Positions 535 to 50,652 of a stretch of 64,000 bases of DNA are shown piece after piece. This stretch comes from Octopus bimaculoides. Lineage: Eukaryota. The notes under the pieces are model-generated. The model was given only the letters and a program-made list of their open reading frames with translations, was not told the origin of the DNA and did not search any database. How positions within the stretch are numbered: the stretch's first letter is position 1; each line of letters starts with the position of its first letter. The stretch is taken from assembly GCF_001194135.2 (NCBI RefSeq), contig NC_068984.1:5550693-5614692 (forward strand). Reading direction: 5' to 3'. The translations under genes and the position numbers were made by a program.

Positions 535-730
535 ATACAGTTCTATATTTGAGAGATGAGGAATTATTTACATTATTTACATTTCACGGATATTTGTCCT
601 CATCTCGTTTGTTGTTAACACAACATTTCGGCTGATATACCCTCCAGCCTTCATCAAGTGTCTTGGTGAAATTTCGAACCTGGGTACTCATTCCTAAGGT
701 ATTTTTCGATGCTGTTGTTATTATTATTAT
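535..730 (-). mobile_element. Short non-coding HHR-bearing element (Penelope pLTR / retrozyme-like)
   Basis: Contains HHR at 617-662. Its end AATACAGTTCTATATTT(G/A)AGAGATGAGGAATTAT..TATTTACATTATTTACAT recurs at about 44484-44540. Bounded by an (ATT)n tract at about 717-730. Confidence 0.6.
617..662 (-). ncRNA. Type I hammerhead ribozyme motif, degenerate (C3U, stem III C>T)
   Basis: Minus strand reads GACAC-TTGATGA-A-GGCTG-gagggtatat-CAGCC-GAAAT-GTT-GTGTT. Stem I GACAC/GTGTT, stem II GGCTG/CAGCC. Confidence 0.7.
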
Positions 731-1404
731 GGAAAGAGAAAGAAAGGGGTGGGCATTTGTAACTCCAAGGGTCAATAGGGGCTTTTGGCCAAAATGTGTT
801 GAGAACCTTTGGTTTAAATTGATACAGAGACACGTTTATCTAGGATGGTGGTAGTCCTACAGATACCGTTATCCCTTCACTAAAGATGCAAGGATCATGT
901 ATTGTACCCTTTAAATGTATTCTGCTCAATGACAGACAACCTGGACTAAATAACGAAAACAACTGTGATTTTGTAGAACTCTGCGTCTATGTTTGTATTT
1001 TCATTGCATTTAAAAGACAAGCGATTGCACACAAGCAGTAATTCTCCAAGAGGTGGAACGCCAATAGATTCAAGGAACAAACTTCAGTTATAGAACTTTC
1101 TAGCAAAAGAAAATGAATAAAACAACGCAGGACCGGAACGAGACATGGTTAAATTTTGTTTTATTTTATTTAATTCAAACATTTTTCTTAACATTTCATC
1201 AAAACGAAACATGGATATTCTAGCTTGGAGAATTTCGGAAATCCCAGCAGAGAAAACTCCAGCTTGGAATAAAAGAGGAAAACCTTAACAAACACTAACG
1301 CAGCACTTTTGGGGTGTTGGTGGGACAATGTTTCAGATGGTTATATATATTAGAAAATAACTTATCGCAATACCATGTCTTGAAGAAGAAATATGAAAGT
1401 CTAA

Positions 1405-1978
1405 AACTTGGCATGATCGTGAGTGCGTCGGATCAAATGCTCTGAGGCATTTCTTCCGGCTCTATGAATTCTGAGTTCAAATACCACCTCGGTCAACTTT
1501 GTTTTGTATCCCTTTGAGACACCAGTACTTTAATAGAAATAAAGTACCATTCAGGTACCGGAGGGAGGGGATGTAATCGACGAAGCCTTCCTAAAAAAAT
1601 GTCAGGTCCTGTCCCTTTAGTGGGAATGATTATTATTATGGCGGTGTTCGGCGGCGAGCTGGAAGAATCGTTAGCACGCCGGGCAAAATGAAATTACCGA
1701 GGCCAACTTTGCCTTTCATACTTTCGGGGTCGATAAAATAAGTACCAGTTCGGAATTGGGGGTCGATGCAATCAACCTATTCCTTCTCCCAAAATTGGTG
1801 GCCCTTTGCTGAAATTTGGGACCATTATTATTATATCGGCGACCTGGCAGAATCGTTAGCGCGTCGGACAAAAAGCTTACCAGCATTTCTTCCGGTTCTT
1901 TACTTGATGAGTTCAAATACTGTCGCGGTCGACTTTGCTTGTCATCCTTTCGGGATCGATAGAATAAAGGATCAGTTT
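1405..1978 (+). mobile_element. Three head-to-tail tRNA-derived SINE (family 1) copies
   Basis: Copies at about 1405-1638, 1650-1834 and 1838-1978. A-box-like GCTGGCAGAATCGTTAGC, B-box GAGTTCAAAT (deleted in the middle copy) and body GTCGACTTTGCC..GGGGTCGATAAA..AAGTACCAG, separated by short (ATT)n. Confidence 0.85.
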
Positions 1979-2061
1979 ATCATTTAGAGAACCCACTCAA
2001 ATCAAGATAGTTGACCTTCTTCTAAAATTAAAAGAGATGTCGAAATGTTTATACATACATA

Positions 2062-2062
<1 letters not shown>

Positions 2063-2115
<53 letters not shown>

Positions 2116-2127
2116 GCTATCTATATA
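2063..2127. repeat. (ATCT)n microsatellite
   Basis: Direct reading; abuts the gap at 2129-2518. Confidence 0.95.
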
Positions 2128-2997
2128 TNNNNNNNNNNNNNNNNNNNNNNNNNNNNNNNNNNNNNNNNNNNNNNNNNNNNNNNNNNNNNNNNNNNNNNNN
2201 NNNNNNNNNNNNNNNNNNNNNNNNNNNNNNNNNNNNNNNNNNNNNNNNNNNNNNNNNNNNNNNNNNNNNNNNNNNNNNNNNNNNNNNNNNNNNNNNNNNN
2301 NNNNNNNNNNNNNNNNNNNNNNNNNNNNNNNNNNNNNNNNNNNNNNNNNNNNNNNNNNNNNNNNNNNNNNNNNNNNNNNNNNNNNNNNNNNNNNNNNNNN
2401 NNNNNNNNNNNNNNNNNNNNNNNNNNNNNNNNNNNNNNNNNNNNNNNNNNNNNNNNNNNNNNNNNNNNNNNNNNNNNNNNNNNNNNNNNNNNNNNNNNNN
2501 NNNNNNNNNNNNNNNNNNAGCCAAAATTCCCAATCTTCCATTTTCCTCCAGAGTGTGTGTGTGTGTGTGTTTTGTTAGTTGTAACGAATTCTTCGCTACC
2601 AAAAAAAGAAAAAAAAGAAAAAAACAAAATGGTTATTGGTAAGTGTTGTTCCTTTTTTTGGTTGTTAAATGAGATTATTGTGTTTATATAAAGTAATATG
2701 GGATGTGTATTCTGCAAATGTTATTATTGTAATGATGTAGAGTAGTGTGGTACATATGTTTTGTATTATTGCATTATTGCATTGAGCGCTGTCTATAGGG
2801 TATTATTGTATTCGTTCTTTATTAGAATTGCTATTGAATTAGGGCAGAGTTTTATAGAATTTGTACTGTGTCGAGGAGAGCGACTCATTAGGTTACATGT
2901 AAAGTTAGGAGCCCTGAGTTAGTGGTTCTGTGTTTGTTAATTTGAATTTATGTTACACTCACTTTATATCATATCAATCTTTTTTTTTTTTTGTCCT

Positions 2998-3335
2998 TGT
3001 TTCAATCTTTAGACTGCGGCCATGCTGAGGCACCGCCTTGAAACATTTTTAGTCGAATAATTCGACTCAATGTACTTCGCTGTTTTAGTTTGGTACTTAT
3101 TCTCCCTTCTCTTTTTCTGAACCGCTAAGTTCAGGTAACGTGCACACGCCTACAGCGGTTGTCCAGCGGTGAATGGAAGCACACACACAAACCACGAGCT
3201 TCTTTCAGTTTTCGTCTACCAAATCCTCTCACAAGGCTTTGGTCGACCCGAGACTGTAGTGGAAGGCACTTGCCCATGGTGCGATGCAATGGGACTGGAG
3301 CCAGAATTATGTAGTTGAGGGGTAAGCTTCTTACC
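2998..3335 (-). mobile_element. tRNA-derived SINE family 2, near full length
   Basis: Minus strand has a tRNA-like head, central GGCAAGTGCCTTCCACTACAGTCTCGGGTCGACCAAAGCCTTGTGAGAGGATTTGGTAGACG and tail AGGCGGTGCCTCAGCATGGCCGCAG. Homologous to 6335-6470 and 49114-49570. Confidence 0.85.
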
Positions 3336-9019: not shown

Positions 9020-9500
9020 GTAATGGACGAAAAACGGAAGGCAAAATCTTCTGGGACTTTGATTTCCAGACAAGGTATTTGAGCACCGAAGGCCGGATAT
9101 AGTAACCTTTAGGAGGGACAAAAAGAGTGCCTAATAATCGACGTAGCAATACCAGGAGATTGACATATCATGAAAGAACGAGAACAAGTTGATAAATATG
9201 GTGACCTACGATGTGGCAGCTACGAGATTCGAACACAAAGGTTATCCCTATTGTCATCGGAGCATTGGGTTCAATACCACTCAATCTGGAAAAAAAAACC
9301 CTGAAAACCTTAGAAATACCCTACAATCTGGATGTATTGCAAAAGTCGGCATTACTTAGACCTGCACGCATATTGCGAAAAGTAGTGTCTCTTTGAGGTC
9401 CTTGTTATGACTTGATAAACTACAAACTCCCAGTAGACACAATATCTCCAATCAACAACCTCACGATATTGTATATTGTGCGACATCTATAATAATAATA
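9020..9500 (+). mobile_element. RLE-type (R4/Dong-like) non-LTR retrotransposon, 5'-truncated, endonuclease domain
   Basis: Disrupted reading KIFWDFDF..HRRPDIV..KKECLIIDVAIPGD..KVIPIVIGALGSIP..LQKSALLRPARILRKV* shows the PD..D RLE motif. Ends in (ATA)n. Confidence 0.85.
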
Positions 9501-9502
9501 TT

Positions 9503-9740
9503 TTTTTTATTTCTTTATTGCCCACAAGGGGCTAAACATAGAGGGGACAAACAAGGACAGACAAAGGGATTAAGTCGATTACATCGATCCCAGTTCGTCA
9601 CTGGTACTTAATTTCTCGACCCCGAAAGGATGAAAGGCAAAGTCGACCTCGGCGGAATTTGAACTCAGAACGTAACGGCAGACGAAATACCGCTAAGCAT
9701 TTCTCCCAGTGTGCTAACGTTTCTACCAACTCGCCTGGCT
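9503..9740 (-). mobile_element. SINE family 1, full length (A-rich tail variant)
   Basis: Complete head, B-box and tail CCCTTTGTCTGTCCTTGTTTGTCCCCTC..GGGCAATAAAGAAATA on minus. Confidence 0.9.
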
Positions 9741-9944: not shown

Positions 9945-10160
9945 GATGATTTCAAATTTTTCCCACAAGGGCAGCTTGGGGGTGGCGATTAAGTCGATTA
10001 CATTGAACCCCAGTGCGTAACTGGTACTTATTTAATCGACCCCGAAAGGATGAAATGCAAAGTCGACCTTGGCGTAATTTGAACTCAGAACGAGGCGCGG
10101 GCGAAATTCCGCTAAGCATTTCGCCCAACGTGCTAACGATTCTGGTAGCTTGCCGCCTTA
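9945..10160 (-). mobile_element. SINE family 1
   Basis: Full head and body on minus; (ATT)n on both sides. Confidence 0.9.
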
Positions 10161-12475: not shown

Positions 12476-13389
12476 CTCTTAACCATTCAGATGATAATGA
12501 CAAATATGCTTATTGTTTATGAAAAGTAGATTTTCCGATGTTCTCAGTCGCAGAAATTTCGAAACTGTTTGATTTGGATTTTGAGTAAGTCTCGGTATAA
12601 TTATTTACAGTGTGTGTGTGTGTATGTATGTGTGTATGTGTGTATGTGTGTAAGTATGTATGTGTGTATGAATGCATGNNNNNNNNNNNNNNNNNNNNNN
12701 NNNNNNNNNNNNNNNNNNNNNNNNNNNNNNNNNNNNNNNNNNNNNNNNNNNNNNNNNNNNNNNNNNNNNNNNNNNNNNNNNNNNNNNNNNNNNNNNNNNN
12801 NNNNNNNNNNNNNNNNNNNNNNNNNNNNNNNNNNNNNNNNNNNNNNNNNNNNNNNNNNNNNNNNNNNNNNNNNNNNNNNNNNNNNNNNNNNNNNNNNNNN
12901 NNNNNNNNNNNNNNNNNNNNNNNNNNNNNNNNNNNNNNNNNNNNNNNNNNNNNNNNNNNNNNNNNNNNNNNNNNNNNNNNNNNNNNNNNNNNNNNNNNNN
13001 NNNNNNNNNNNNNNNNNNNNNNNNNNNNNNNNNNNNNNNNNNNNNNNNNNNNNNNNNNNNNNNNNNNNNNNNNNNNNNNNNNNNNNNNNNNNNNNNNNNN
13101 NNNNNNNNNNNNNNNNNNNNNNNNNNNNNNNNNNNNNNNNNNNNNNNNNNNNNNNNNNNNNNNNNNNNCTGGAACGCGACTGACGAAAAAAAATTCCGAA
13201 TGACCCATCCACGTTTTTTCTTGCCCCTTTTTGCATCATCTAACTCTCTGGATGTCTTGTTGTCACCTGTTGTGTTCTTGTCCCATTTTTTATATTTATA
13301 TATATATATATATATATATACCGCTGGTTATAATGCTCTTTCCATCATTTTAGCTTTCGAATAATGCCACCCCGCTGTCTAGGCCAGCA

Positions 13390-15752: not shown

Positions 15753-15988
15753 TTATTTCTTTACTACCCACAAGGGGCTACACACAGAGGGGACAAACAA
15801 GGACAGACAAACACGGATTAAGTCGATTATATCGACCCCAGTGCGTAACCGGTACTTATTTAATCGACCCCGAAAGGATGAAAGGCAAAGTCGACCTCGG
15901 CGGAATTTGAACTTAGAACGTAGCAGCAGACGAAATACGGCTAAGCATTTCGCCCGGTGTGCTAACGATTCTGCCAGCTGGCCGCCTT
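15753..15988 (-). mobile_element. SINE family 1, full length, low divergence
   Basis: Complete match to the other full-length copies. Confidence 0.92.
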
Positions 15989-16307
15989 AGCTGGAGCTGT
16001 GTTTGCCTCGGACGCTTGTACATTCTGAGTTGTTAGAGTGTGAGTTTTGATAGTAGAGAGAAAGCTTTTGTTTATTAGAGGCTGCTATGATAACCACGGT
16101 GTTGGGTGGGGTGGAATAGGATAGATTCAGGGTAGAATTATTAAAGATAGAGTAATACGTGCGTGTGTGTGTGCGTGGATGATTCCCGACGACACGGTTC
16201 CGGGTTCCGCACAGAAGCACACAGATATGTTGGAAATAGAAAAAAATGAAACAAAATTATCATAGATTACGAAGATGAATTTAACAAGGATATCTATATA
16301 TATATAT

Positions 16308-16474
16308 TCAAATTTTTTTCTCCGTGTTTTTCTCCTTGTCTCCGTATTCTTTCTGTTGAAGAGCGTAGCTCGAAACGTCAAAGACTTTCCGTATTCCCGA
16401 GCGTCATACTAATATATACTTTTGTTATTTACACCACCTGTCCTCGTCTGTTGTTATTATTTGTATATTCTCCC
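16308..16474 (+). mobile_element. About 170-nt HHR-bearing element inserted in (AT)n
   Basis: Flanked by (AT)n on both sides; contains a minimal HHR; the sequence after its core resembles 29700-29760. Confidence 0.6.
16348..16384 (+). ncRNA. Minimal type I hammerhead motif with A6U core variant
   Basis: TCTTT-CTGTTGA-A-GAGC-gta-GCTC-GAAAC-GTC-AAAGA. Stem I TCTTT/AAAGA, stem II GAGC/GCTC, loop-less self-complementary stem III (ACGT). Confidence 0.65.
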
Positions 16475-16493
16475 ATATATATATGTATGTATG

Positions 16494-16555
<62 letters not shown>

Positions 16556-16783
16556 AACTCGAAAGTTTCTTACCAAAGTCTATCTGCATAAATCAAAACC
16601 AGCCATGGATTACTGAGAGGAACTTACCAAGGATATAAATAGAAACTTCAAAATTTATTACCGAAGTCGACCTGCATAAATCTAAGCCAGTAAATTTAAA
16701 ACTATTTTCAAAAATACTTTCTCATATATTTTTCTAATTTTAAAACAACATTCGATATATTATATAAAAAACTTTATCTCCTC

Positions 16784-16875
16784 TATCTCTGACGAGTGGA
16801 AGTATTGTCTATCAATGTGTATCAACAATGTATTCCATTATAATGACAATACTTTCCTGAAACGATCGTAAGATG
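16784..16875 (+). ncRNA. Type I hammerhead ribozyme, core intact
   Basis: TATCT-CTGACGA-GT-GGAAGTATTGTC-(33 nt)-GACAATACTTTCC-T-GAAAC-GATC-GTA-AGATG. Cleavage triplet GUA, predicted cut after 16870. Confidence 0.8.
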
Positions 16876-17571: not shown

Positions 17572-18525
17572 TAAGGACATGCGTAAGCTCGCAAGGAATG
17601 AAGCCAGTATGCTCCGATGGTTGTGTAATGTTAGTGTGTATACTTGACAGAGTGTAAGCACCTTGAGAGAAAAGTTGGACCTAAGAAGCATCAGTTTTGG
17701 TGTGCAAGAGAGACGATGCGCTGGTATTGTCATGTGGCAAGAATGGATGAGGATAGCTGTGTGAAAAAGTTTCACGCCCTAGCGGTTAATGGAACCTGTG
17801 GAAGAGGTAGACCCAGGAAGACCTGGGATGAGGTGGTGAAGCACGACCTTCGAACATTAGGCCTCACCGAAGCAATGACTAGTGACCGAAACCTTTGGAG
17901 ATATGCTATGCGTGAGAAGACCTGGCAAGACAAGTGAGACCATACCCGTGGCCTTTACCAGTGGTGTAGCCAGCCCACTTACGCGTACCTTTCCTTCATT
18001 GGACATAAAACTCTGCTTGCGAAGATCTGTTGGGGCAAGTGAAAGTGAAATTGAACCAAATTCGATGACTGGCACCCGTGCCACTGGAGTGCTAACAGCA
18101 CCATCCGAGCGGGGTCACAGCAAGAGCAGTTTTCTAGCTTCCGTGCCGATGGCACGTAAAAAGCTCCATTTGAGCCTGATCATTACAAGCGTCGCCTTAC
18201 TGGCACTTGTGCCGGTGACACGTGAACAAAACATTCGAGCGAGGTCGTTGCCAGTGCCGCTGGACTGATTCCTGTACTGGTGGCACGTAAAAAACACCAT
18301 TTGAGCGTGGCCGTTGCCAGTACCGCCAGATTGGCCTTCATGCCGGTGGCACGTAAAAGCACTCACTACACTCTCGGAGTGGTTGGCGTTAGGAAGGGCT
18401 TTCAGCTGTAGAAGCTCTGCCAAATCAGATTGGAGCCTGGTGCAGTCATCTGCTGCGCCAGTCTTCAGTCAAAACGTCCAACCCATACTAGCATGGAAAG
18501 CGGACGTTAAATGATGATGATTATG
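17572..18525 (+). mobile_element. RTE-clade LINE, 5'-truncated 3' end
   Basis: RKLARNEASMLRW..RWYCHVARMDEDSCVKK..GRGRPRKTWDEVVKHDLRTLGLTEAMTSDRNLWRYA, then a long 3' UTR and a (TGA)n tail. Confidence 0.9.
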
Positions 18526-18625: not shown

Positions 18626-18776
18626 ATGTATGTATGTATGTATGTATGTATGTATGTATGTATGGATGTGTATAAATATATGCGCTTGTAGTTGTGTGCA
18701 TATATATGTGTATATATATGTGTGCGTATATATATATATGCGTTTGAGTATATGCAAATACATATACATATGCATG

Positions 18777-18808
<32 letters not shown>

Positions 18809-18849
18809 CATATGCATGTGTATATATATGTATATATATATATATATAC

Positions 18850-18925
<76 letters not shown>

Positions 18926-19080
18926 TTATATGTGTATTTGTATATATATACATATATATACATGGATACTCACACACACACACACACACACACATATATT
19001 TATACACACGCATATATATGTATATACATGTGTAGGTATGTGTATGTATGTAAGTATACGCGTATGTGAGCATGCGTGTG
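18626..19080. repeat. Compound microsatellite (ATGT)n/(AT)n/(CA)n
   Basis: Direct reading; the overlapping ORFs are low-complexity artefacts. Confidence 0.95.
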
Positions 19081-19687
19081 TATTCGAGAGTCCTGATGGA
19101 AACTGTAATACACGAAACATACCTCTGCAGTGTTCTCGTTATAAGGTTCAGAACACAGAACATATGTAACAATTGCTCGTTATTTTTCTCTGTTTTCTTA
19201 AATTCCATCTTCTATTATTTTTCTATCTAAATTTAGCTAACTAAGCATTGCGTTGTTAATGTTCGCAAGCATCATTATTTTCAGCATTAACTTCTCAAAT
19301 ACTTTGATGCTATGTTCAAAGACACCTTCTCCCATCTATTCTGCAATATTTCTTTCGCATTTAACCAATATGACATCAAATCATAGGACTTTGTTTCCTA
19401 TCAACCGTGTTAAAATTCTCCGGCATCTTTTCACGCAACGCTCACAATTTCATGTCGTTACTTACATGTATTTTTTTCTCCCCTGATATTTATGTTATTT
19501 TCTGTTTATTCCTCCCAACTCGTAAAGTGCTGCCTCTTTACTATCATCGCGTTTTTTCTCGTTCACTCTTCTTGCTCATTCTTTCACTTTCTCTCAAGAT
19601 CTTGCAACGTTGCTTTCCAACACAAGCGCAGCACGACGCCACGTTTACTACTACTACTACTACTACTATTATAATTATAATTATTGA

Positions 19688-20741: not shown

Positions 20742-20745
<4 letters not shown>
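19920..20745 (-). mobile_element. RLE-type (R4/Dong-like) LINE, CCHC knuckle plus RLE, 5'-truncated
   Basis: CRICGDGQKTINHIISGCPVLAKKEYIHRHD..IHWKLCQHYG / IPADDNVSLKEMEKLSKYKDLEIEVTRMWNLKTETIPIIVDALG. (AAT)n on both flanks; the gap at 20277-20541 is internal. Confidence 0.9.
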
Positions 20746-24421: not shown

Positions 24422-24426
<5 letters not shown>

Positions 24427-24710
24427 GATAGAATGAGATAACGAAGCCAAGGCTGTGAGTGGTTTTCAGGATATTTATAATGAAATAGTCTTACAGATGT
24501 TTTGGGGATATTATGGATATCCCTTCATCAGAGACGGTGTGAGAAAATATTTAAGTTCGAATTATCATGGAAAAGGAGAAGATAGAGAATATATAGGGAA
24601 ATAAGAGAATGAAAGTAGAATTAAGACCCATAAAGATATTTTAGTTGAGTCCCATTATTTCAGGAAAATGGTGTATAGAAGTGGAAAAAAAGTATCCTAG
24701 CATCTCATGT
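24422..24710 (-). mobile_element. About 290-nt HHR-bearing element, copy 1
   Basis: Homologous over its whole length to 43785-44060; no ORF; its 3' end abuts (CA)n. Confidence 0.75.
24488..24535 (-). ncRNA. Type I hammerhead motif (G12A mutated)
   Basis: GTCT-CTGATGA-A-GGGATAT-ccata-ATATCCC-C-AAAAC-ATCT-GTA-AGAC. Confidence 0.75.
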
Positions 24711-24958
24711 TTAGTCATTTCGAAGCATGGAGCCGTGGAATCAGTGTTACTTGTTCAAAAGGGTTTTGTGGAGTGAATGAAAATTTGAGAATGTATTGGT
24801 AGTATTTGCGGATAGATGGCGGGAGGAGAGATGGGTTGGAATAGAAAGAGGAGATAGGTAAACTTAGAACAGGAGGAGAAAATGAGAGGAAGAAAGAGAG
24901 AAAAAAGAAAAAAAAAAGGTGGGAGTGAAAAAGCACAATACCTCTCGTGCATATATAT

Positions 24959-25182: not shown

Positions 25183-25462
25183 AGGGAAATTGAACAAGGA
25201 GGCGGACTCTCGGGAAGTTGTTAAATCATTTATATCTTGAATTCTTCTGCAGATGTTTCGACAGAGGACTTTCTATTTCTGTTAACATGTCTGCTTGATG
25301 AGTTTGTTATTTACATCCTTCTTGATGAGACTGATGCATTTCCGACCATAATTTGTCCTTTGGACATTTTGGGAGTGCATCTGTCCAAACATATGTAGAA
25401 GAATTCAAGTTATAAAAGGTTTAACAACATCCTGAGAGTTCGTCTCTTAATTCCATTTCCCT
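25183..25462. repeat. 83-bp inverted repeat (about 83% identity) enclosing an HHR
   Basis: Arms at 25183-25265 and 25380-25462, 14 mismatches in 83. Confidence 0.9.
25318..25401 (+). ncRNA. Type I hammerhead motif (C3U, G12C mutated)
   Basis: CTTC-TTGATGA-GAC-t-GATGCA-t-TTCC..GGGA-g-TGCATC-t-GTC-CAAAC-ATAT-GTA-GAAG. The inverted partner arm retains GTC-GAAAC. Confidence 0.72.
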
Positions 25463-26904: not shown

Positions 26905-27070
26905 CACCAGAGCTGAAGACACCTCCGAAAGAGGTAGGGCACCACGTCGAAAACGGTAGAGGAGTAGGGGCGGCCCAAAACAGGACGTGGTTCCTCCTGA
27001 TGATGCCTTTAGCCACTGGATCCTATAAAGAAACTGTTGAGGTAGCGAACCACGAAACGTAGTTGGAATT
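26905..27070 (+). ncRNA. Possible double hammerhead-like cluster
   Basis: CTGAAGA (26913), GAAAAC-GGTA-GAGGA (26949-26963), TCCTC-CTGATGA (26992-27003) and GAAAC-GTA (27054-27061), plus several 7-8 bp stems; no canonical stem II. Confidence 0.35.
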
Positions 27071-29684: not shown

Positions 29685-29720
29685 TCTTTTGATGAAAGAA
29701 TGTCCTCCGAAACGTTAAGA
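29685..29720 (+). ncRNA. Degenerate minimal hammerhead motif
   Basis: TCTT-TTGATGA-A-agaatgtcctcc-GAAAC-GTT-AAGA; the flank after the core resembles the 16308-16474 element. Confidence 0.45.
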
Positions 29721-40221: not shown

Positions 40222-40337
40222 CCATCTTACAGCTGTTTCTGCTGTAATGTGCTTTGGTATCACCATTATTATGCTAAAAAATATATATCGTAGTTGGTAG
40301 TAAAACCGATTTGAATCATGGAGTTTCATCAGAGTGG
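40222..40337 (-). ncRNA. Type I hammerhead-like motif with long, eroded stem II
   Basis: CCACT-CTGATGA..(about 85 nt)..A-GAAAC-AGCT-GTA-AGATGG; the right half GAAAC-AGCT-GTA-AGA is identical to the 43846 copy. Confidence 0.5.
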
Positions 40338-40423
40338 AAAACAAATAAATAAATATAGACAAGGAAAGGTTGGATATTGTGGGAATCAAGTCATGTGGCG
40401 TGTGTATATAATTGGACTCTCCC

Positions 40424-40800
40424 ATGGAAAAGAAAGGGAAAACAGGATCCAGGGCGGTGGAATATATAAAAAGAAACCCTAAAACCTTCTACAAGTTCGC
40501 AAAAGCGTCTGCCTCAGTGCGATACAGGATAGGGCTACAGTTTGATGAAAAGGGCTCACTGACTGCATACCCCAAAGTGTTTTCATCTCCCAACTAGAAA
40601 ACATGAAAATAAGCAGACCTGATGAATTCCTCAAGAGAAAAGGCGACCATCAATTACATTGACATTACAGAAGAGGATATATTGTCGCCCTTTGACGAGA
40701 TAAACTTAAACTCTGCAACAGGCCCAGATGCACACCCAGAAATTCTGTTAAAACATGCAGGAAATCTCTTGCAAACCCACTGCAAATACTGCAGTCCGCC
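40424..40800 (+). mobile_element. CR1-group LINE ORF2 internal fragment
   Basis: RAVEYIKRNPKTFYKFAK..RIG; INYIDITEEDIL..NSATGPDAHPEILLK..KSLANPLQIL (region between EN and RT). Confidence 0.75.
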
Positions 40801-41814
40801 CTAATGTGGATCTTTTGTCCACGTTTATAGCAACGAGGGATTCTGCTCTCTACCTCACACTTTCATTATTGTTTCTCCGACTGTCACTGTTTCTGAAAGC
40901 TTCTCTAAATTTTCTTCCTTACTTTGTATATATAATTTCCAGAATTTTTCCATGACAATTAGTGGCTTCCGTTTCTGTGGCTTGGAGCACGGTGACCTCT
41001 TTCTCGCTTCCTAGAAGCACAGCCGCCGCCATCCAAGCCACGTCTATTTCAGNNNNNNNNNNNNNNNNNNNNNNNNNNNNNNNNNNNNNNNNNNNNNNNN
41101 NNNNNNNNNNNNNNNNNNNNNNNNNNNNNNNNNNNNNNNNNNNNNNNNNNNNNNNNNNNNNNNNNNNNNNNNNNNNNNNNNNNNNNNNNNNNNNNNNNNN
41201 NNNNNNNNNNNNNNNNNNNNNNNNNNNNNNNNNNNNNNNNNNNNNNNNNNNNNNNNNNNNNNNNNNNNNNNNNNNNNNNNNNNNNNNNNNNNNNNNNNNN
41301 NNNNNNNNNNNNNNNNNNNNNNNNNNNNNNNNNNNNNNNNNNNNNNNNNNNNNNNNNNNNNNNNNNNNNNNNNNNNNNNNNNNNNNNNNNNNNNNNNNNN
41401 NNNNNNNNNNNNNNNNNNNNNNNNNNNNNNNNNNNNNNNNNNNNNNNNNNNNNNNNNNNNNNNNNNNNNNNNNNNNNNNNNNNNNNNNNNNNNNNNNNNN
41501 NNNNNNNNNNNNNNNNNNNNNNNNNNNNNNNNNNNNNNNNNNNNNNNNNNNNNNNNNNNNNNNNNNNNNNNNNNNNNNNNNNNNNNNNNNNNNNNNNNNN
41601 NNNNNNNNNNNNNNNNNNNNNNNNNNNNNNNNNNNNNNNNNNNNNNNNNNNNNNNNNNNNNNNNNNNNNNNNNNNNNNNNNNNNNNNNNNNNNNNNNNNN
41701 NNNNNNNNNNNNNNNNNNNNNNNNNNNNNNNNNNNNNNNNNNNNNNNNNNNNNNNNNNNNNNNNNNNNNNNNNNNNNNNNNNNNNNNNNNNNTATATATA
41801 TATATATATATATA

Positions 41815-43784: not shown

Positions 43785-44060
43785 TAGACAATGGGATAAC
43801 AAAGCCAAGGCTGTAATGAGTTTTCAGAATATTTATAATGAAATAGTCTTACAGCTGTTTCTGGGATATTATGGATATCCCTTCAGAGACGGTGTGAAAA
43901 AATATTTGAGTTCAAATTGTTATGGAAAAGGAGGAGATAGGGAATATAGAGGGGAGTAAGAGAATGATAGTAGACATAAGATATTGTAGTTGCAGTTCCA
44001 TTATTCAAGGAAAGCGGTGTATAGAAGTGGTAAAAAAAGTTTCCTATACATGGTATGTAA
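43785..44060 (-). mobile_element. About 280-nt HHR-bearing element, copy 2
   Basis: Homologue of 24422-24710; its 3' end abuts a short (AT)n. Confidence 0.75.
43846..43890 (-). ncRNA. Type I hammerhead motif (3-nt core deletion)
   Basis: GTCT-CTGA[TGA deleted]-A-GGGATAT-ccata-ATATCCC-A-GAAAC-AGCT-GTA-AGAC. Confidence 0.7.
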
Positions 44061-44300
44061 GTTCCAGTAGCAATACATACATATCATATGTATGTATGTA
44101 TGTGTGTATGTATGTATGTGTGTATGTATGTATGTATGTATGTATGTATGTATAAGCTAATGAAAGTGATTACGTCATTCTTGTTCTTTTGTCATGCAGT
44201 AATTCCTCTTACGCTTCGTCCTCAACTGACTTAACTCTAAAGCATAAATATATTGAATTCTAACTGATGGTTATTAGTATTGCTATTACTAAGTGAAATC

Positions 44301-44432: not shown

Positions 44433-44471
44433 ACAGTAGAAGTTTCGGCGTAGCTGCTTTCGTCAAACTAT
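44433..44471 (-). ncRNA. Degenerate minimal hammerhead motif
   Basis: ATAGT-TTGACGA-A-AGC-agctac-GCC-GAAAC-TTCT-ACTGT. Confidence 0.4.
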
Positions 44472-44540
44472 AGATTATGTTTAATACAGTTCTATATTTA
44501 AGAGATGAGGAATTATGTACAATATTTACATTATTTACAT

Positions 44541-44612
44541 GGGCATATGGCGTAGTGGTTAAGAGAGCGGGCTACTAACCCCAAGATTCCGAGTTCGATT
44601 CCAGGCAGTGAC
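44541..44612 (+). other. tRNA-like sequence (SINE head or tRNA pseudogene)
   Basis: A-box TGGCGTAGTGG, GGG-CTACTAA-CCC anticodon arm, B-box GAGTTCGATTCC; the acceptor stem does not pair. Confidence 0.6.
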
Positions 44613-44904
44613 AAACTCTTTATTGGCATGACTTCCAATTCCTTACATTCTGTGTTCAAATAACACCAGAATCAATTTTGCTGTTCTTTCCTCCAGGTTC
44701 GATATAAATAAACAACCAGGTCTAGTCTTGTAGTCGATGGTATCGACTAACCCTTCCACTCCTGAAGTTGCTGACCCTGCGCCAGAATTTGAAACCATTA
44801 TCACATTTTGCTACTCCTCCCACTTCAATGCTCGTTCTACTCTTCTCTACTTCTTGTTACAAGATTCGTATCTTCGTCCCTATTATCGTATACTGATCTA
44901 TAAG

Positions 44905-45060: not shown

Positions 45061-45166
45061 CGGTCACTCAGGGATCAGGGAAACTGGGCAACCAGCCGCA
45101 TCTATCTATCTATATGCGTGCGGGCACACACACACACACACACATATCAGATAGATAAATAGATAA

Positions 45167-45407
45167 GGCGGTGAGCTGGCAGAATCGTTAGCATGCCGGG
45201 CGAAATACTTAGCGGTATTTCATCTGTCTTTATGTTCTGAGTTCAAATTCCGCCGAGGTCGACTTTGCCTTTCATCCTTTTGGGGTCGATAAATTAAGTA
45301 CCAGTTACACACTGGGATCGGTGTAATAGACTTAATCCTTTTGTCTGTCCTTGTTTGTCTTCTCTATGTTTAACCCCCCCCCGCCCCCGTGGGCAATAAA
45401 GAAATAA
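45167..45407 (+). mobile_element. SINE family 1, full length, inserted in (GATA)n
   Basis: Complete copy with GATA repeats on both sides. Confidence 0.92.
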
Positions 45408-45419
45408 GATAGATAGATA

Positions 45420-45634: not shown

Positions 45635-45850
45635 ATTGGATTCAAATTTTGACACAAGGTCAATAATTTCAGAAAGGGGATGAGTCGGTTTTGCATTGAG
45701 CCCAGGGCTTAACTGGTACTTATTTTATCGACCCTCAAATAATGCAAGGCAAAGATAACCTCGGTGGAATTTGAACTCAGGACGTAACGACAGATGAAAT
45801 GTCGCCAAGCATTTCGCCCGGCGTGCTAACGACTCTACCAGCGCGCCTCC
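45635..45850 (-). mobile_element. SINE family 1
   Basis: Full head and body on minus. Confidence 0.85.
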
Positions 45851-47910
45851 TTAATCCCCTTATGTTCATATTGAAAGGAGAGTATTGTTGCTGTTGTTTA
45901 ATATAAGTCATTCCTATAGTTCATAGCGTTCCATGCATGGCCACCTAGTATTGTGTTCACATAATCTATATTAGACTACATTAACCAATATGTCTATCAT
46001 TAAAAAAAACAAACACTACCGTGTGATTTAAAGGAGTTCTGACTGTTATTTCTAACAGATCAAGCAAACATGTAGTCGTTTCATAATTTGTGCGATTTGA
46101 TACAGATTTATGGGCGTAAATTGAAATGCCAATCGAGAGTCTTTTAGTTTAATTTTCATTGGTGGCGTGGTATAGGTCTATGTTGTAAATTTGTATAAGT
46201 AACCAAGGTGTACCAAGGGTGCCCTGGTGGTATGACTGACCATAACATGCGGCACCAACAACTATCACTTGACGAAGCTAAGTTGACATAGGTGTCTAGA
46301 ATTGACCTAGCTGTATCAAACATCATCGTCAATAGCCACAGTAGCAGCAATTGTTGTTGCCTTCATCGTAGTTATCAACGTAATCGTCACCGTTGCTATT
46401 GGCCTTGCTAAATTCTTCGCCACCTTCATTACAACTGCCGCAAAGGCTGTCCTAACAACAGAACTTGCAAATCATAACATGCGAATAGAAGGCGAGTTAG
46501 GTTTCAGTTCTTAGGGCAAGTTAAACTATATGTGATAGACTATCATTCTATCCAGAAGCACGTTTATCTCTCATCCACTTAACGATGATCTTAATGTAGA
46601 TAAATCTCTTCCAGTAGTTTGGATTCATTTGATTAAATAAATGAATAAGACCAGATTTGATTCAATCGACTTTACCGTCTTGATAGTTGGCTCCAGTGCT
46701 TAAGTAATAAATTCTTATTTTATGAACGTCATAAAAAAAAAGATACGGAAAACCGATTCCTGGAGGAACTGACCTCGGAGGTAGAAACCATTAAACATTT
46801 AATACAAGTCATGATTACGTCAACCATAAAACGACCTCAAAGACTACTTACAAGACATTAGTAGTTGAGAGTTAGCTCGTAAAATGTTTTTGCTCGCTTC
46901 TTACTTAACATTGCAAAGAAGAGCACTTGAATAAGGGCCTCCAAAAAATGCAATTATCTCTGCTTTCATTTGGAATCTATAAAACAGGTTTAGAGGGAGA
47001 TCATTTTGGATCTTTACAAACATTAAATCTGCACACGTCCGCGGACACGGACGGACACGCACACACACACACACACAGCCTCTCCCTCTCTCTCTCTCCC
47101 TCTCTCTCTCTCTCTCCTCCCCCTCTCTCTCTCTCCTCCAATTCTATCATTGTTTATTTATCTTTTTCTCTCTCTTTCTCTCTCAGAACCTAAATGTGTA
47201 AGAACAGAGCAAGTAACACACATCAATAAAGACAACAGCATTATATATCGATTGTAAGACAGCGTTATTCAGCAATGGTTACCTCCGCCTATCCCCCCCC
47301 CTGCTCTGGCCAATCATGTGTCTCTACACACTGACTCTAGTTTGTTTCTCTATTCAACACACGACTGAAGATGATGTGGAAGCATTGACATTTTTACCGT
47401 TTGTGTCGTTTTTACTTGCAAATGTTAAACTGAATTCAGATATTTGTCCCTTTAATATATTTTTTTATTCTCGATATGTTTATTTCGCCAGTTAAACTAC
47501 TACTACTACTACAACTACAACTATGGATCGACTCTGAGCATGCTTTTTTAATTAGGAGGGAAGAAACTTACCTGTAGCTTGAGAATGGCGGAGTTATCCG
47601 GGATTTTTGCGTGGGGTTTACCCCGGATTTTCCTAAGTGGACTACCCCGCTATTGGAGATTCTATATATTTATTTATTTAATAATTACTTATTTCTCTAA
47701 TTTCTATTATATATCCTCTCGTATATCCCTTAATGTGGTAGTATTTTCCTTTGGTCGATGTAAACTCCACCTGTTATTGTTTTGTATTTTTTGTTTTGTT
47801 TTGTTTTGTGCACTATAACCCCTCCTTCAACATTGTCCACCATGTCTTGGGTCCTTGTGGCCAATTAAGGAAATTATTATTATTATTATCATCATCATCA
47901 ATACAATTAT

Positions 47911-48480
47911 GGCGGCGAGCTGGCAGAATCGTTAGCAGGCCGGCAAAATGCTTTGCGGTACTTTGTCCGTCTTCGTGTTCTGACTTCAAATTCTGCCGAG
48001 GTTAACTTTGCCTTTCATCCTTTTGGGGTCGATTAAATAAGTACCAGTTACGCACTGGGGTCGATGTAATCGACTTAATCTCTTCCCCCTAAATTTGAGA
48101 ATAATAATAATCATAATAATTATTATTATTACTATGCCCGTGAGATGGCAGAATCGTTAGTACACAGGGTGAAATGCTTAACAGTATTTCGCCCGTCGCT
48201 ACGTTCTGGGTTCAAATTCAGCCGAGGTCGACTTTGCCTTTCATTATTTCGGCGTTGATAAATTAAGTACTATTAGTGTACTAGGGTTGATCTCAGCCAC
48301 TGGCTCCTTTCCCACTCCAATTTCAGCCCTAGTGCATATAGTAGAAACGATTATTATTATTATTGTTGTTGTTACTAAGTTAGCAATCTGCCAAAATCGT
48401 TAGCACGCCTTGCAAAATGCTTAGCAGCATTTCACCAGTCTTTCCCATTCTGTATTCAAATGTAACCTTGGGTAAATGTC
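47911..48480 (+). mobile_element. Three head-to-tail SINE family 1 copies
   Basis: Copies at about 47911-48100, 48136-48350 and 48378-48480 (truncated), separated by (AAT)n/(ATT)n. Confidence 0.88.
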
Positions 48481-49113
48481 TTTCGGTGTAATACTTTAAC
48501 CCAAAATGCTGCTAATGTAACTGCAAAAATCCTTTGAATCGACAGTATGTGAGTTTGGGTGGTCGACCTATAATAGTATTACGGTCTTGTTTAGCATCTA
48601 TATCTGGTCCTAGGAAGCTATTATTAGTGGTCACTATTTTCCTCTGTCCAGGTCTTCAGTCTAAAAATAATCCACGACATAAAACGTTCCTTTATTTGTC
48701 TCAGACTCACTGGAAAAGCGTTGTGGGTGTTGTCCTCCTCATGTATAAAGCACAAAACGTGTTTTGATGCGGACGAGGAAGACGAATTGAAAAACAGAGA
48801 GCTGAGTGTTTACAAAATGACATGAGTTATATGCTATCGTACGAGAAAAGCAAAAATAAATAAAACAAATAAACAAAAAACCTACAATTAACTGAAATAG
48901 CAAACTGGAATGATATGAAGCAGGTTACGATTGAATGAATCGTGTGAACAGTGTATTGGCTGTCATTTGATGAGAGATGAGAGGTCAAAGTCCGTTCTCA
49001 CTTCAATTAAACATTTCATAAAAGACAGCAGAAGAAAGTTTCTCATACTGAATAACAATACTTAGATTTTGTATTATACAAATAATGATTTTAATAATGT
49101 TTATAGCAGAAGC

Positions 49114-49570
49114 GCAGGCGTGGCTGTGTGGTAAGTAGTTTGCGCGGCTGTGTGGTTACGGCGGCGAGGTGGCAGAAACATTAGCACACCGGGCGAAATG
49201 CTTAGCGGTATTTCGTTCTCAGTTCAAATTCCACCGAGGTCGACTTTTGCCTTTCATCATTTCGGGGTCAAAAAATTAAGTACCAGTTACGCACTGAGGT
49301 CGATGCAATCGACTTAATCCGTTTGTCTGTCCTTGTTTGTCTCCTTTATGTTTAGCCCCTTGTGGGCAATAAAGAAATAAGAAGTTTGCTTCCAAGCCAT
49401 ATGGTTCCGGATTCAGTCCCGCGGTGTGGCACCTAGAGCAAGTGTATTCTGCTATAGATTCATGAGAGGATTTGGCAGACTTTCAGAAAACTTAGGTAAT
49501 GTGGTTGATTTGTTGAACTAAAATTCTTCAAGGCGGTGCCACAGCATGGCCACATACTAATGACTGATAC
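49114..49570 (+). mobile_element. SINE family 1 (49160-49380) nested in SINE family 2
   Basis: Family 2 head GGCTGTGTGGTAAG is interrupted and resumes at AAGAAGTTTGCTTCC after the family 1 tail. Confidence 0.85.
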
Positions 49571-49689
49571 AATCACAAGATACATATTGGCATGCATCCA
49601 TATACAAATATATAATTGTGTGTTCGAATCTGACTGTCTCTCAATTTCTGAAACACACAGATATGAACATACATACAACTCTACACATG

Positions 49690-49769
49690 CATATATAGAC
49701 ATATATATATATATAGACATATATATATATATAGACATATATATATATATAGACATATATATATATATA
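49690..49769. repeat. 18-bp minisatellite built from (AT)n with a periodic GAC
   Basis: Repeats of ATATATATATATATAGAC. Confidence 0.85.
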
Positions 49770-50495
49770 NNNNNNNNNNNNNNNNNNNNNNNNNNNNNNN
49801 NNNNNNNNNNNNNNNNNNNNNNNNNNNNNNNNNNNNNNNNNNNNNNNNNNNNNNNNNNNNNNNNNNNNNNNNNNNNNNNNNNNNNNNNNNNNNNNNNNNN
49901 NNNNNNNNNNNNNNNNNNNNNNNNNNNNNNNNNNNNNNNNNNNNNNNNNNNNNNNNNNNNNNNNNNNNNNNNNNNNNNNNNNNNNNNNNNNNNNNNNNNN
50001 NNNNNNNNNNNNNNNNNNNNNNNNNNNNNNNNNNNNNNNNNNNNNNNNNNNNNNNNNNNNNNNNNNNNNNNNNNNNNNNNNNNNNNNNNNNNNNNNNNNN
50101 NNNNNNNNNNNNNNNNNNNNNNNNNNNNNNNNNNNNNNNNNNNNNNNNNNNNNNNNNNNNNNNNNNNNNNNNNNNNNNNNNNNNNNNNNNNNNNNNNNNN
50201 NNNNNNNNNNNNNNNNNNNNNNNNNNNNNNNNNNNNNNNNNNNNNNNNNNNNNNNNNNNNNNNNNNNNNNNNNNNNNNNNNNNNNNNNNNNNNNNNNNNN
50301 NNNNNNNNNNNNNNNNNNNNNNNNNNNNNNNNNNNNNNNNNNNNNNNNNNNNNNNNNNNNNNNNNNNNNNNNNNNNNNNNNNNNNNNNNNNNNNNNNNNN
50401 NNNNNNNNNNNNNNNNNNNNNNNNNNNNNNNNNNNNNNNNNNNNNNNNNNNNNNNNNNNNNNNNNNNNNNNNNNNNNNNNNNNNNNNNNNNNNNN

Positions 50496-50535
<40 letters not shown>

Positions 50536-50569
50536 AAAAGAGTTACGGAATGGAGTATGGGAAGTCAGG

Positions 50570-50652
50570 GCTACATATATTTCGTAGCGAGTGGAACCTC
50601 AGAAGTGATAAAATTCGAGTGAGGTGTATACCGCGGGCTACTCTCTTCAGGC
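50570..50652 (-). ncRNA. Type I hammerhead-like motif
   Basis: GC-CTGAAGA-GA-GTAGC..ACCTCA..TGAGGT..GCTAC-GAAAT-ATAT-GTA-GC; lies about 37 nt from (AT)n. Confidence 0.55.

What the first reader, a model, noticed from the sequence alone, without database searches (positions are those of the whole stretch)
617..50652. About 11 hammerhead ribozyme motifs in 64 kb, carried by several unrelated short non-coding elements (possible retrozyme / Penelope-derived system)
Seen: CUGANGA..GAAA..NUH cores with pairing stems at 617(-), 16348(+), 16784(+), 24488(-), 25318(+), 26905(+, uncertain), 29685(+), 40222(-), 43846(-), 44433(-) and 50570(-). Stem sequences differ between families while the topology is shared: type I, very short stem III, often a palindromic tetraloop (GATC, AGCT, ATAT) or none. 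Several sit in 170-350 nt ORF-less elements with a pyrimidine-rich leader that end 35-100 nt after the cleavage site at a dinucleotide microsatellite. Established: Penelope-like elements carry minimal type I HHRs in their pLTRs, palindromic short stem III HHRs cleave as dimers, and metazoan non-LTR retrozymes are 150-400 nt HHR repeats expressed as circRNA. Inference: this genome hosts a diverse, high-copy population of monomeric, microsatellite-anchored HHR elements. No Penelope RT or GIY-YIG ORF is visible here. I cannot tell whether these are already catalogued for this taxon.
Basis: partly seen in the sequence, partly recalled or inferred. Interest (0 to 1): 0.85.

Follow-up and report, generated by a model that had tools for sequence, protein, structure and literature searches.

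The report
Decayed Penelope-type hammerhead ribozyme relics
About half of the reported hammerhead ribozyme motifs are real but mutated leftovers of Penelope-like retrotransposon tails inserted into microsatellites, which is a known and ordinary feature of invertebrate genomes rather than a new or active ribozyme system.

Summary

- **Intact core:** only 16785-16874(+) keeps a complete core (CUGACGA...GAAA...UA), with helix I, a long helix II and a palindromic helix III.
- **One lesion each:** 16348-16384(+) has A6U and 617-662(-) has C3U. The two copies of one ~290-nt family have G12A (24488-24535(-)) and a UGA deletion (43846-43890(-)).
- **Weak:** 29685(+), 40222(-) and 44433(-).
- **Not supported:** 25318(+), 26905(+) and 50570(-).

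The credible sites match the published Penelope-like-element (PLE) min-HHR. They have a 4-5 bp helix I, an unpaired A at the 5' end of helix II, and a short palindromic helix III. Six of the 11 sites have a microsatellite 45-103 nt downstream.

As a control I recovered 11 intact min-HHRs from PLE loci of another invertebrate assembly. Four lie 138-199 nt after a GIY-YIG ORF, and most have a microsatellite about 70-90 nt downstream. Rfam misses these too, so its silence on the window is uninformative.

The window holds no PLE ORF, no tandem arrays and no strictly intact copy. The best reading is dead, monomeric 3'-terminal PLE remnants or short PLE-dependent derivatives. This is a known kind and of low interest.

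The parts
16785..16874 (+). Best hammerhead. Helix I is AUCU/AGAU. The core is CUGACGA. Helix II has 14 positions with one U x C mismatch and a G10.1.U11.1 wobble, and its loop is about 35 nt. Then come GAAA, a helix III palindrome ACGAUCGU (2 bp plus a GAUC loop), and A17.
   Evidence: The complete core was read directly. It fails my strict descriptor only because of the mismatch at helix II position 2.
16348..16384 (+). min-HHR with one core lesion (A6U): UCUUU CUGuUGA A GAGC-GUA-GCUC GAAA CGU C AAAGA. Helix III is the ACGU palindrome.
   Evidence: Descriptor hit with one mismatch. Outside model R1 gives 12.6 bits, rank 5. A microsatellite lies 99-103 nt downstream.
617..662 (-). min-HHR with one core lesion (C3U): GACAC uUGAUGA A GGCUG-(10 nt)-CAGCC GAAA UGU U GUGUU.
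   Evidence: Descriptor hit. It is the top hit of outside model R1 in the whole window (15.7 bits, E about 0.08). No downstream microsatellite.
24488..24535 (-). Family A hammerhead, copy 1. CUGAUGA is intact, followed by a bulged A and a 7-bp helix II. G12 is changed to A, and a G-to-U change breaks the helix III palindrome.
43846..43890 (-). Family A hammerhead, copy 2. GAAA and the CAGCUG palindrome are intact, but 3 nt (UGA) of the 5' core are deleted.
24425..24712 (-). Family A element, copy 1 (about 290 nt). It has a pyrimidine-rich leader (74% Y) and the hammerhead about 65 nt from its 3' end. It ends at (CA)n(TA)n, 24383-24424.
   Evidence: Self-BLAST gives 84% identity over 270 nt to copy 2. 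Alignment. Flanks are unrelated.
43790..44052 (-). Family A element, copy 2. It starts about 35 nt from (CATA)n at 44087-44153 and ends in a short TA-rich run.
29685..29720 (+). Weak relic: UCUU uUGAUGA A (helix II decayed) GAAA CGU U AAGA. It has C3U and an ACGU palindrome.
   Evidence: R1 gives 9.8 bits, rank 14. (TA)n lies 97-100 nt downstream. The leader is 69% Y.
40222..40337 (-). Split relic. CUGAUGA is at 40325-40331 and GAAACAGCUGUAAGA at about 40225-40239, the latter nearly identical to family A's 3' half. No helix II can form.
   Evidence: (TA)n lies 98 nt downstream.
44433..44471 (-). Weak relic. It has uUGACGA, a bulged A, a helix II of 2 bp at most, GAAA and no palindromic helix III. 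Helix I is AUAGU/ACUGU.
   Evidence: (TG)n lies 68 nt downstream.
50569..50651 (-). Not supported as a hammerhead. CUGAAGA and GAAA are present, but there is no helix I, position 17 would be G, and an alternative GCUAC/GUAGC hairpin is available. It lies in a 350-nt pyrimidine-rich element (50533-50884) bounded by (TG)n and (TA)n.
26912..26962 (+). Not a hammerhead. GAAA does not follow helix II.
   Evidence: fold z-score +0.76.
25294..25337 (+). Not a hammerhead. It has two CUUGAUGAG motifs but no GAAA. It lies inside a MITE-like element with 83-bp terminal inverted repeats (25183-25265 and 25380-25462).
47361..47400 (+). It has CUGAAGA and a helix II of about 4 bp, with GAAA changed to GAcA.
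   Evidence: R1 gives 14.0 bits, E about 0.25. An (ACT)n microsatellite lies 96 nt downstream and the leader is 67% Y.
16482..16555 (.). A (TGTA)n(TA)n(CA)n microsatellite that lies between the 16348 element (16309-16481) and the 16784 element (16556 to about 16935).

Best explanation
The credible motifs are 16785(+), 16348(+), 617(-) and the family A pair at 24488(-) and 43846(-). Sites 29685(+), 40222(-) and 44433(-) probably belong with them. I read all of these as relics of the minimal type I hammerhead that Penelope-like retroelements (PLEs) carry in their 3' UTR or pLTR.

**Shown.** Each motif sits about 45-100 nt upstream of the 3' end of a short (about 170-350 nt) ORF-less insertion bounded by a microsatellite. 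Almost every copy carries a lesion at an essential core position (C3, A6, G12, or a 3-nt deletion).

**Inferred mechanism.** A PLE RNA, or a short RNA that carries only its 3' region, was copied into DNA by the PLE reverse transcriptase. This happened at a nick made by its GIY-YIG endonuclease, which prefers (TA)n and (CA)n repeats. Copying starts at the 3' end, so severe 5' truncation leaves only the tail with the ribozyme. In an active, tandemly arranged PLE, two such ribozymes pair through their palindromic helix III and cleave the long transcript as a dimer.

**Consequence.** The copies here are single and mutated. They are dead relics, not a working ribozyme system.
For: 1. **Published architecture.** PLE min-HHRs have a 4-5 bp helix I, a long helix II with an unpaired nucleotide at its 5' end, and a helix III that is absent or a short palindrome. 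Most genomic copies are single, heterogeneous and 'probably truncated PLEs' (PMC4209133). Six window sites share the unpaired A straight after CUGANGA. Helix III is ACGU, AUGU, ACGAUCGU or ACAGCUGU.
2. **Descriptor enrichment.** Allowing up to one core mismatch gives 3 hits against 0.33 in shuffles.
3. **Positive control.** In PLE loci L001-L009 the same descriptor finds 11 exact-core min-HHRs in 89.8 kb. Four lie 138-199 nt after the stop of a GIY-YIG ORF (Pfam 26.9 bits, above the cut-off). Ten of the 11 have a microsatellite 28-152 nt downstream. The L001 copy is a 5'-truncated PLE with (ATT)n on both sides.
4. **Same spacing in the window.** Six of 11 sites have a microsatellite 45-103 nt downstream (baseline 7.2%, P about 5e-5). 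For model hits picked blind to microsatellites the figure is 4 of 11 (P about 0.006).
5. **Outside model.** The best hit of model R1 in the whole window is the 617(-) site. Sites 16348(+) and 29685(+) are also among its 25 hits.
6. **Family A.** The two copies (84% identical, unrelated flanks) carry different lesions. At every core position at least one copy keeps the consensus base.
7. **Literature.** PLEs insert preferentially into microsatellites and carry hammerheads near their 3' ends (PMC8557442).
Against: - No PLE RT or GIY-YIG remnant lies next to any site in the window.
- No window element shows significant sequence homology to the control PLE 3' UTRs.
- No Rfam hammerhead hit, and model R1 scores are not significant (best E about 0.08).
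- The overall CUGANGA density equals the shuffles.
- Three sites share the same C3U change with G8 unchanged. That is odd for independent decay and could mean some of them are chance matches in T-rich DNA.
- The two family A copies seem to share a 5' end, which fits a discrete non-autonomous unit better than random 5' truncation.
- The host taxon was not established with tools.
Confidence: 0.7

Rival explanations
1. Discrete SINE-like non-autonomous elements. Under this reading the units are defined short retroposons of about 170-350 nt, not randomly truncated PLE copies. Each would have its own 5' end and pyrimidine-rich leader, would keep a PLE-type hammerhead and tail, and would be mobilised in trans by PLE proteins. 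They would be the monomeric counterparts of animal non-LTR retrozymes.
For: - The two family A copies share about the same 5' boundary and have unrelated flanks.
- Several elements are bounded by microsatellites on both sides within 170-360 nt.
- The leader is pyrimidine-rich in about half of them.
- The 2026 preprint 10.64898/2026.07.22.740005 reports retrozyme families related to pLTRs, with dispersed monomer copies.
Against: - Only one family has two copies, so a shared 5' end rests on n = 2.
- No tandem copies.
- No internal promoter or tRNA-like head was found in these elements.
- The cores are mutated.
Confidence: 0.2
2. Chance resemblance. Under this reading the motifs are fortuitous CUGANGA/GAAA combinations in AT-rich, repeat-rich DNA, picked out by eye.
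For: - Core density equals the shuffles.
- Strict descriptors give 0 hits.
- No Rfam hit, and R1 E-values are 0.08 or worse.
- Three of the 11 sites are clearly not hammerheads.
- Fold z-scores of several sites are near 0.
Against: - The full architecture with up to one mismatch is about 9-fold enriched over shuffles.
- The bulged A and palindromic helix III recur across sites.
- The link to a downstream microsatellite at PLE-like spacing holds even for blind model hits.
- The family A copies carry complementary lesions.
- This reading is likely true for 25318, 26905 and 50570, and possible for 44433 and 29685.
Confidence: 0.08
3. An active retrozyme or circRNA system. Under this reading the elements are transcribed, self-cleave and circularise, as metazoan non-LTR retrozymes do.
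For: - Type I topology with a palindromic short helix III, as in retrozymes.
- One copy, 16785-16874(+), keeps the whole core.
Against: - No tandem repeats with a 150-500 nt period anywhere near the sites. Dimer-dependent hammerheads need a second copy.
- Lesions at C3, A6 and G12 and a 3-nt core deletion lie at positions known to be essential. That they are essential is established knowledge, not tested here.
Confidence: 0.03

Closest known systems
Minimal hammerhead ribozymes of Penelope-like elements (min-HHR; Cervera & de la Pena 2014, PMC4209133; the variants of Lunse, Weinberg & Breaker are cited in PMC6765202)
   Same: - Type I topology with a 4-5 bp helix I.
[quoted passage not shown]
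- Helix III reduced to a short palindrome.
- Single, heterogeneous, dispersed copies.
- A position about 50-100 nt from the 3' end of the insertion, next to a microsatellite.
   Different: - No adjacent PLE ORF in the window.
- All but one copy carry a core lesion.
- The U3 copies keep G8, whereas the published variant is the covarying U3-A8 pair.
- 16785(+) has an unusually long helix II (14 positions with a loop of about 35 nt).
Animal non-LTR retrozymes (tandem 150-400 nt hammerhead repeats expressed as circRNA; argued to derive from pLTRs in preprint 10.64898/2026.07.22.740005)
   Same: - Short ORF-less units carrying a type I hammerhead.
- Monomeric dispersed derivatives are reported for retrozyme families.
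   Different: - No tandem arrangement here.
- The cores are mutated.
- Expression and circularity cannot be tested with these tools.
Schistosoma Sm-alpha / Sj-alpha SINE-like elements with hammerheads
   Same: A short non-autonomous retroposon that carries a type I hammerhead.
   Different: - Those have a tRNA-like pol III promoter and a canonical hammerhead with loop-loop contacts.
- No tRNA-like head was found in the window's hammerhead elements.
- The tRNA-like sequence at 44543-44620 lies on the opposite strand.

Membership tests
PLE-associated minimal hammerhead (min-HHR) | Conserved core C3-U-G-A-N-G-A9 ... G12-A-A-A15.1 ... U16.1-H17 | tested here: inconclusive
   - Met in full only at 16785-16874(+).
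- One lesion each at 16348 (A6U), 617 (C3U), 24488 (G12A) and 43846 (UGA deleted).
- Not met at 25318, 26905 and 50570.
-.
PLE-associated minimal hammerhead (min-HHR) | Type I topology with a short (4-6 bp) helix I closing the motif | tested here: met
   - Helix I of 4-5 bp at 16785, 16348, 617, 24488, 43846, 29685 and 44433.
- The stem sequences differ between families: AUCU/AGAU, UCUUU/AAAGA, GACAC/GUGUU and GUCU/AGAC.
PLE-associated minimal hammerhead (min-HHR) | Helix II with an unpaired nucleotide at its 5' end | tested here: met
   - An unpaired A follows CUGANGA at 16348, 617, 24488, 43846, 29685 and 44433.
- The same feature is present in all 11 control PLE hammerheads.
PLE-associated minimal hammerhead (min-HHR) | Helix III absent or a short self-complementary segment (dimer-forming) | tested here: met
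   - ACGU (16348, 29685), AUGU with G.U pairs (617), ACGAUCGU (16785) and ACAGCUGU (43846, 40222).
- The controls have AAUU, AUAU and ACGU.
PLE-associated minimal hammerhead (min-HHR) | Location in the pLTR or 3' UTR of an element that encodes RT and a GIY-YIG endonuclease | tested here: not met
   - No RT or GIY-YIG remnant in the window (regex; tblastn with a PLE endonuclease gives E above 1).
- No homology to the control PLE 3' UTRs.
- Linkage elsewhere in the same genome could not be tested, because no genome of this organism is available to the tools.
PLE-associated minimal hammerhead (min-HHR) | Self-cleavage (as a dimer) | not testable with these tools
   - Needs in vitro transcription of monomer and dimer constructs.
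- Lesions at C3, A6 and G12 predict that most copies are inactive. This rests on established knowledge of the hammerhead core.
Rfam hammerhead families (Hammerhead_1, _3, _II, HH9, HH10) | Score at or above the gathering threshold | tested here: not met
   - No hit at gathering or at E up to 10, even in a 161-nt search.
- The same library misses a bona fide PLE min-HHR in L001 at E up to 1, so this test has no power for the class.
Animal non-LTR retrozyme | Head-to-tail tandem repeats of the hammerhead unit (about 150-1000 nt) | tested here: not met
   - TRF finds no array with a period above 66 nt.
- Self-BLAST finds no adjacent direct copies of any hammerhead element.
Animal non-LTR retrozyme | Expression as circular RNA | not testable with these tools
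   No transcriptome data were available.
tRNA-derived SINE with hammerhead (Sm-alpha type) | tRNA-like head or pol III A and B boxes upstream of the hammerhead on the same strand | tested here: not met
   - ARAGORN finds no tRNA-like gene.
- The only tRNA-like sequence near a site (44543-44620) is on the opposite strand.

The most novel reading that the evidence does not exclude
This genome, probably a cephalopod's, may hold families of discrete ~170-350-nt non-autonomous retroposons that have not been catalogued. Each unit would have a defined 5' end, a pyrimidine-rich leader and a PLE-type minimal hammerhead, would be targeted to dinucleotide microsatellites, and would be mobilised in trans by Penelope-like elements. 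Such elements would be monomeric relatives of animal retrozymes. They might account for part of the large 'unclassified SINE' fraction reported for octopus genomes (PMC13282606).
Probability: 0.2. Interest if true: 0.45.

Novelty: new member of a known kind. Interest (0 to 1): 0.22.

Why it matters
It matters little beyond annotation.

- **Annotation.** If the reading is right, a share of the short unclassified repeats next to microsatellites in this genome can be labelled as Penelope-derived tails. Hammerhead relics then become a handy marker for them.
- **Method.** Rfam's hammerhead models do not see the PLE min-HHR class, whereas a simple descriptor with a bulged nucleotide and a palindromic helix III does.
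- **Assembly.** Because most gaps fall in microsatellites, which are the elements' target sites, copies are probably under-counted in gapped assemblies.

Tried and rejected
1. **Rfam cmscan.** I ran it on the whole window at gathering and at E up to 10, and on two sub-regions. There was no hammerhead hit. A control later showed the test has no power for this class.
2. **First strict descriptor.** It had no bulged nucleotide and gave 0 hits. It was too strict for the published architecture.
3. **Metagenome scan for family A's helix II.** It gave 0 matches.
4. **Taxon identification.** A LINE ORF gave only unnamed ENA hits, and the encoding contig comes from an unnamed assembly. My octopus guess rests on my memory of the dominant SINE sequence plus the octopus repeat literature, so it is not established.
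5. **PLE coding remnants in the window.** Neither a motif regex nor tblastn with a PLE endonuclease found any.
6. **Homology to control PLE 3' UTRs.** BLAST found only LINE matches. A by-eye resemblance of window 13169-13300 to the control hammerhead-plus-tail (alignment) was not supported by blastn or by an nhmmer profile, so I dropped it.
7. **Outside covariance model R1.** Its scores on the window are not significant on their own (best E about 0.08). I used only the ranks and the microsatellite association.
8. **The 17092-16984(-) descriptor hit.** It has an A at position 3 and an 80-nt loop in AT-rich sequence, so I judged it a chance match.
9. **tRNA-SINE origin for 617(-) and 44433(-).** I considered this because of nearby tRNA-like sequence. 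I rejected it because that sequence is on the opposite strand and ARAGORN finds nothing.

Full report
**Setting.** The window is AT-rich (GC about 27-40%). It has 16 assembly gaps and 67 microsatellite blocks. Interspersed repeats dominate it:
- A tRNA-related SINE family with about 15 copies.
- LINE reverse-transcriptase remnants, Tc1/mariner remnants and a MITE-like element.

I could not establish the organism with tools. The dominant SINE matches my memory of the abundant octopus SINE. The octopus literature describes abundant SINEs, microsatellites and Penelope-like elements, with an old burst at a Jukes-Cantor distance of about 0.2 (PMC13282606; PMC8967140). This attribution remains a guess.

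**Gaps.** No claimed motif or its element is interrupted by a gap. About 11 of the 16 gaps abut a microsatellite, so they are assembly breaks in simple repeats. The (TA)n downstream of the 50570 element runs into a gap, so its length is unknown.

| Site | Status | Detail |
|---|---|---|
| 16785-16874(+) | Complete core | AUCU CUGACGA, long helix II, GAAA, ACGAUCGU, A, AGAU. Helix II has a G.U at 10.1/11.1 and one U x C mismatch. |
| 16348(+) | One lesion | A6U |
| 617(-) | One lesion | C3U |
| 24488(-) | One lesion | G12A, plus a broken helix III palindrome |
| 43846(-) | One lesion | UGA deleted from the core |
| 29685(+), 44433(-) | Weak | U3 and essentially no helix II |
| 40222(-) | Weak | Both core halves present but no helix II |
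| 25318(+) | Not a hammerhead | No GAAA |
| 26905(+) | Not a hammerhead | No GAAA after helix II |
| 50570(-) | Not a hammerhead | No helix I; G at position 17 |

**More than chance?**
- The raw core density is not enriched (28 CUGANGA against 24.8 +/- 4.7 in dinucleotide shuffles).
- Rfam gives nothing at any threshold.
- Cervera & de la Pena (PMC4209133) define the PLE 'min-HHR' as follows: helix I of 4-5 bp, helix II of 7-8 bp with an unpaired nucleotide at its 5' end, and helix III absent or a short palindrome. It works as a dimer. It occurs as thousands of heterogeneous single copies, 'probably truncated PLEs'.
- A descriptor built on that architecture gives 0 exact-core hits in the window. 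Allowing one core mismatch gives 3 hits (16348+, 617- and one probable chance hit), against 0.33 in shuffles. None of 60 shuffles reached 3.

**Positive control.**
- A LINE ORF from the window led to a contig of an unnamed ENA assembly. By luck, that contig carries a 5'-truncated PLE.
- The PLE has a GIY-YIG ORF (Pfam 26.9 bits against a cut-off of 22.6). A min-HHR with an exact core lies 138 nt downstream of its stop: AUGA CUGAAGA A GAUCC-ACGUA-GGAUC GAAA AUU U UCAU. An (ATT)n microsatellite follows within about 75-95 nt and also lies upstream of the copy.
- I used that endonuclease to fetch eight more PLE loci. The descriptor then found 11 exact-core min-HHRs in 89.8 kb.
- Four of the 11 lie 138-199 nt after a GIY-YIG ORF. 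All 11 have the bulged A and a 4-nt palindromic helix III. Ten have a microsatellite 28-152 nt downstream, and eight of those lie at 68-87 nt.
- Rfam misses the L001 hammerhead at E up to 1. The Rfam negatives in the window therefore carry no weight.

**Window against control.**
- The credible window sites share the bulged A, the palindromic helix III and the spacing to a microsatellite. Six of 11 sites have one 45-103 nt downstream, against 7.2% of random positions (P about 5e-5).
- A less biased test uses covariance model R1, built only from the eight unique control hammerheads, searched over the window with filters off. Its best hit in the window is 617(-) (15.7 bits, E about 0.08). Site 16348(+) ranks 5th and 29685(+) ranks 14th. 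None is significant alone.
- Of R1's 11 full-length hits, 4 have a microsatellite 30-110 nt downstream (P about 0.006). One of them, 47361-47400(+), is a new weak candidate.
- The pyrimidine-rich leader holds for five elements, at or above the 95th percentile of the background.

**Family A.**
- The elements at 24425-24712(-) and 43790-44052(-) are 84% identical over about 270 nt and have unrelated flanks. They are transposed copies of one unit of about 290 nt.
- Their lesions differ. At every core position at least one copy keeps the consensus base. The inferred ancestor is GUCU CUGAUGA A GGGAUAU-CCAUA-AUAUCCC (A/C) GAAA CAGCUG U A AGAC. This inference rests on two copies only.
- Both copies begin at about the same point. 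That slightly favours a discrete non-autonomous unit over random 5' truncation.

**Mechanism.** Established knowledge (PMC8557442; PMC6765202; PMC4209133):
- Canonical PLEs carry hammerheads near their 3' ends in pLTRs.
- They insert preferentially into (TA)n or (CA)n microsatellites through a GIY-YIG endonuclease.
- They are frequently 5'-truncated.
- Their hammerheads cleave weakly and only as dimers formed between tandem copies.

What is shown here is the architecture, the spacing and the decay of the copies. I infer that the window's elements are 3'-terminal PLE remnants, or short PLE-dependent derivatives, integrated at microsatellites. They are now inactive because they are monomeric and carry lesions at core positions that are essential for catalysis. 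That essentiality is established knowledge and was not tested here.

**What argues against this.**
- No PLE ORF lies in the window.
- There is no sequence homology to the control PLE tails.
- The model scores are not significant.
- Three sites share C3U with G8 unchanged. The published variant is the covarying U3-A8 pair.
- The weakest sites may simply be chance matches.

**Known or new?**
- Dispersed, single, heterogeneous PLE-type hammerheads are well documented in many metazoans.
- Monomeric retrozyme-like derivatives of pLTRs have been described.
- Microsatellite targeting by PLEs is published.
- I found no paper cataloguing hammerheads in octopus.

At most this is a new member of a known kind. 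The retrozyme reading fails its defining test, because there are no tandem arrays.

**Verdict.** The finding is partly confirmed, is mostly explained by known biology, and is of low interest.

Noticed in passing
window 9499-9735, 9987-10160, 15753-15989, 19687-19849, 20788-20950, 45164-45415, 45691-45854, 47906-48080, 48142-48270, 49157-49383 and others: The dominant repeat is a SINE of about 170-250 nt with roughly 15 copies, 75-89% identical, often ending in a (TAA)n/(ATT)n tail. It has a tRNA-related head and carries no hammerhead. From memory it resembles the abundant octopus SINE, but I did not verify this with tools.
   Followed up: partly
window 25183-25265 and 25380-25462: There are 83-bp terminal inverted repeats (83% identical) of a MITE-like element. 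The left repeat starts right at the 10-N gap at 25173-25182.
   Followed up: partly
window 44543-44620 (+): A tRNA-like SINE head (GGGCATATGGCGTAGTGGTTAAG...GAGTTCGATTCCAGGC) sits on the strand opposite the 44433 site. ARAGORN does not call it.
   Followed up: no
window 533-583 and 44482-44532: A 51-nt module is shared at 94% identity. It lies 3' of the 617(-) motif and 5' of the 44433(-) motif, and in the second case it abuts the SINE head. Its meaning is unknown.
   Followed up: partly
window 20262-22007 (-), 9205-9393 (+), 17635-17934 (+), 40412-40801 (+): These are remnants of non-LTR (LINE) reverse-transcriptase ORFs. The 20-22 kb copy is broken by two gaps. It is 71-77% identical at DNA level to a LINE in the unnamed ENA assembly ERZ25066847 (L001).
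   Followed up: partly
window 23454-23852 (+) and about 38.6 kb: Tc1/mariner transposase fragments are present (WPPNSPDCNPL..., LPHPPDSPDLSPTDYH...).
   Followed up: no
window 18144-18358: A 66-nt tandem repeat of 3.3 copies at 69% match lies next to a long, complex (TA/TG)n tract at 18626-19060.
   Followed up: no
window, all 16 N-gaps: About 11 of the 16 gaps are flanked by a microsatellite on at least one side. Microsatellite-embedded insertions such as these elements may therefore be under-represented or truncated in this assembly.
   Followed up: yes
window 13176-13199 (+) and 47361-47400 (+): These are two further weak hammerhead-like matches to the outside model. The first starts 8 nt after a gap and looks like a hammerhead whose helix II has been deleted. 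Its homology to the control PLE tails was not supported.
   Followed up: partly
L001 13457-14330; L002 4001-5000 and 7729-7759(-); L003 4001-4985; L005 4001-4870 and 1026-1053; L004 3689-3715; L007 5404-5434 and 8043-8070; L008 4915-4945; L009 2601-2631(-): An unnamed ENA invertebrate assembly (ERZ25066843 and ERZ25066847) carries many PLE copies with intact min-HHRs of two types (helix III AAUU/AUAU, and ACGU). They are inserted in (ATT)n/(TAA)n microsatellites. Rfam does not detect them.
   Followed up: yes
window 16246-16319 and 16588-16659: About 70% similarity links the sequence just upstream of the 16348 element with the sequence just downstream of the shared microsatellite. This may be a local duplication of the target region.
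   Followed up: no
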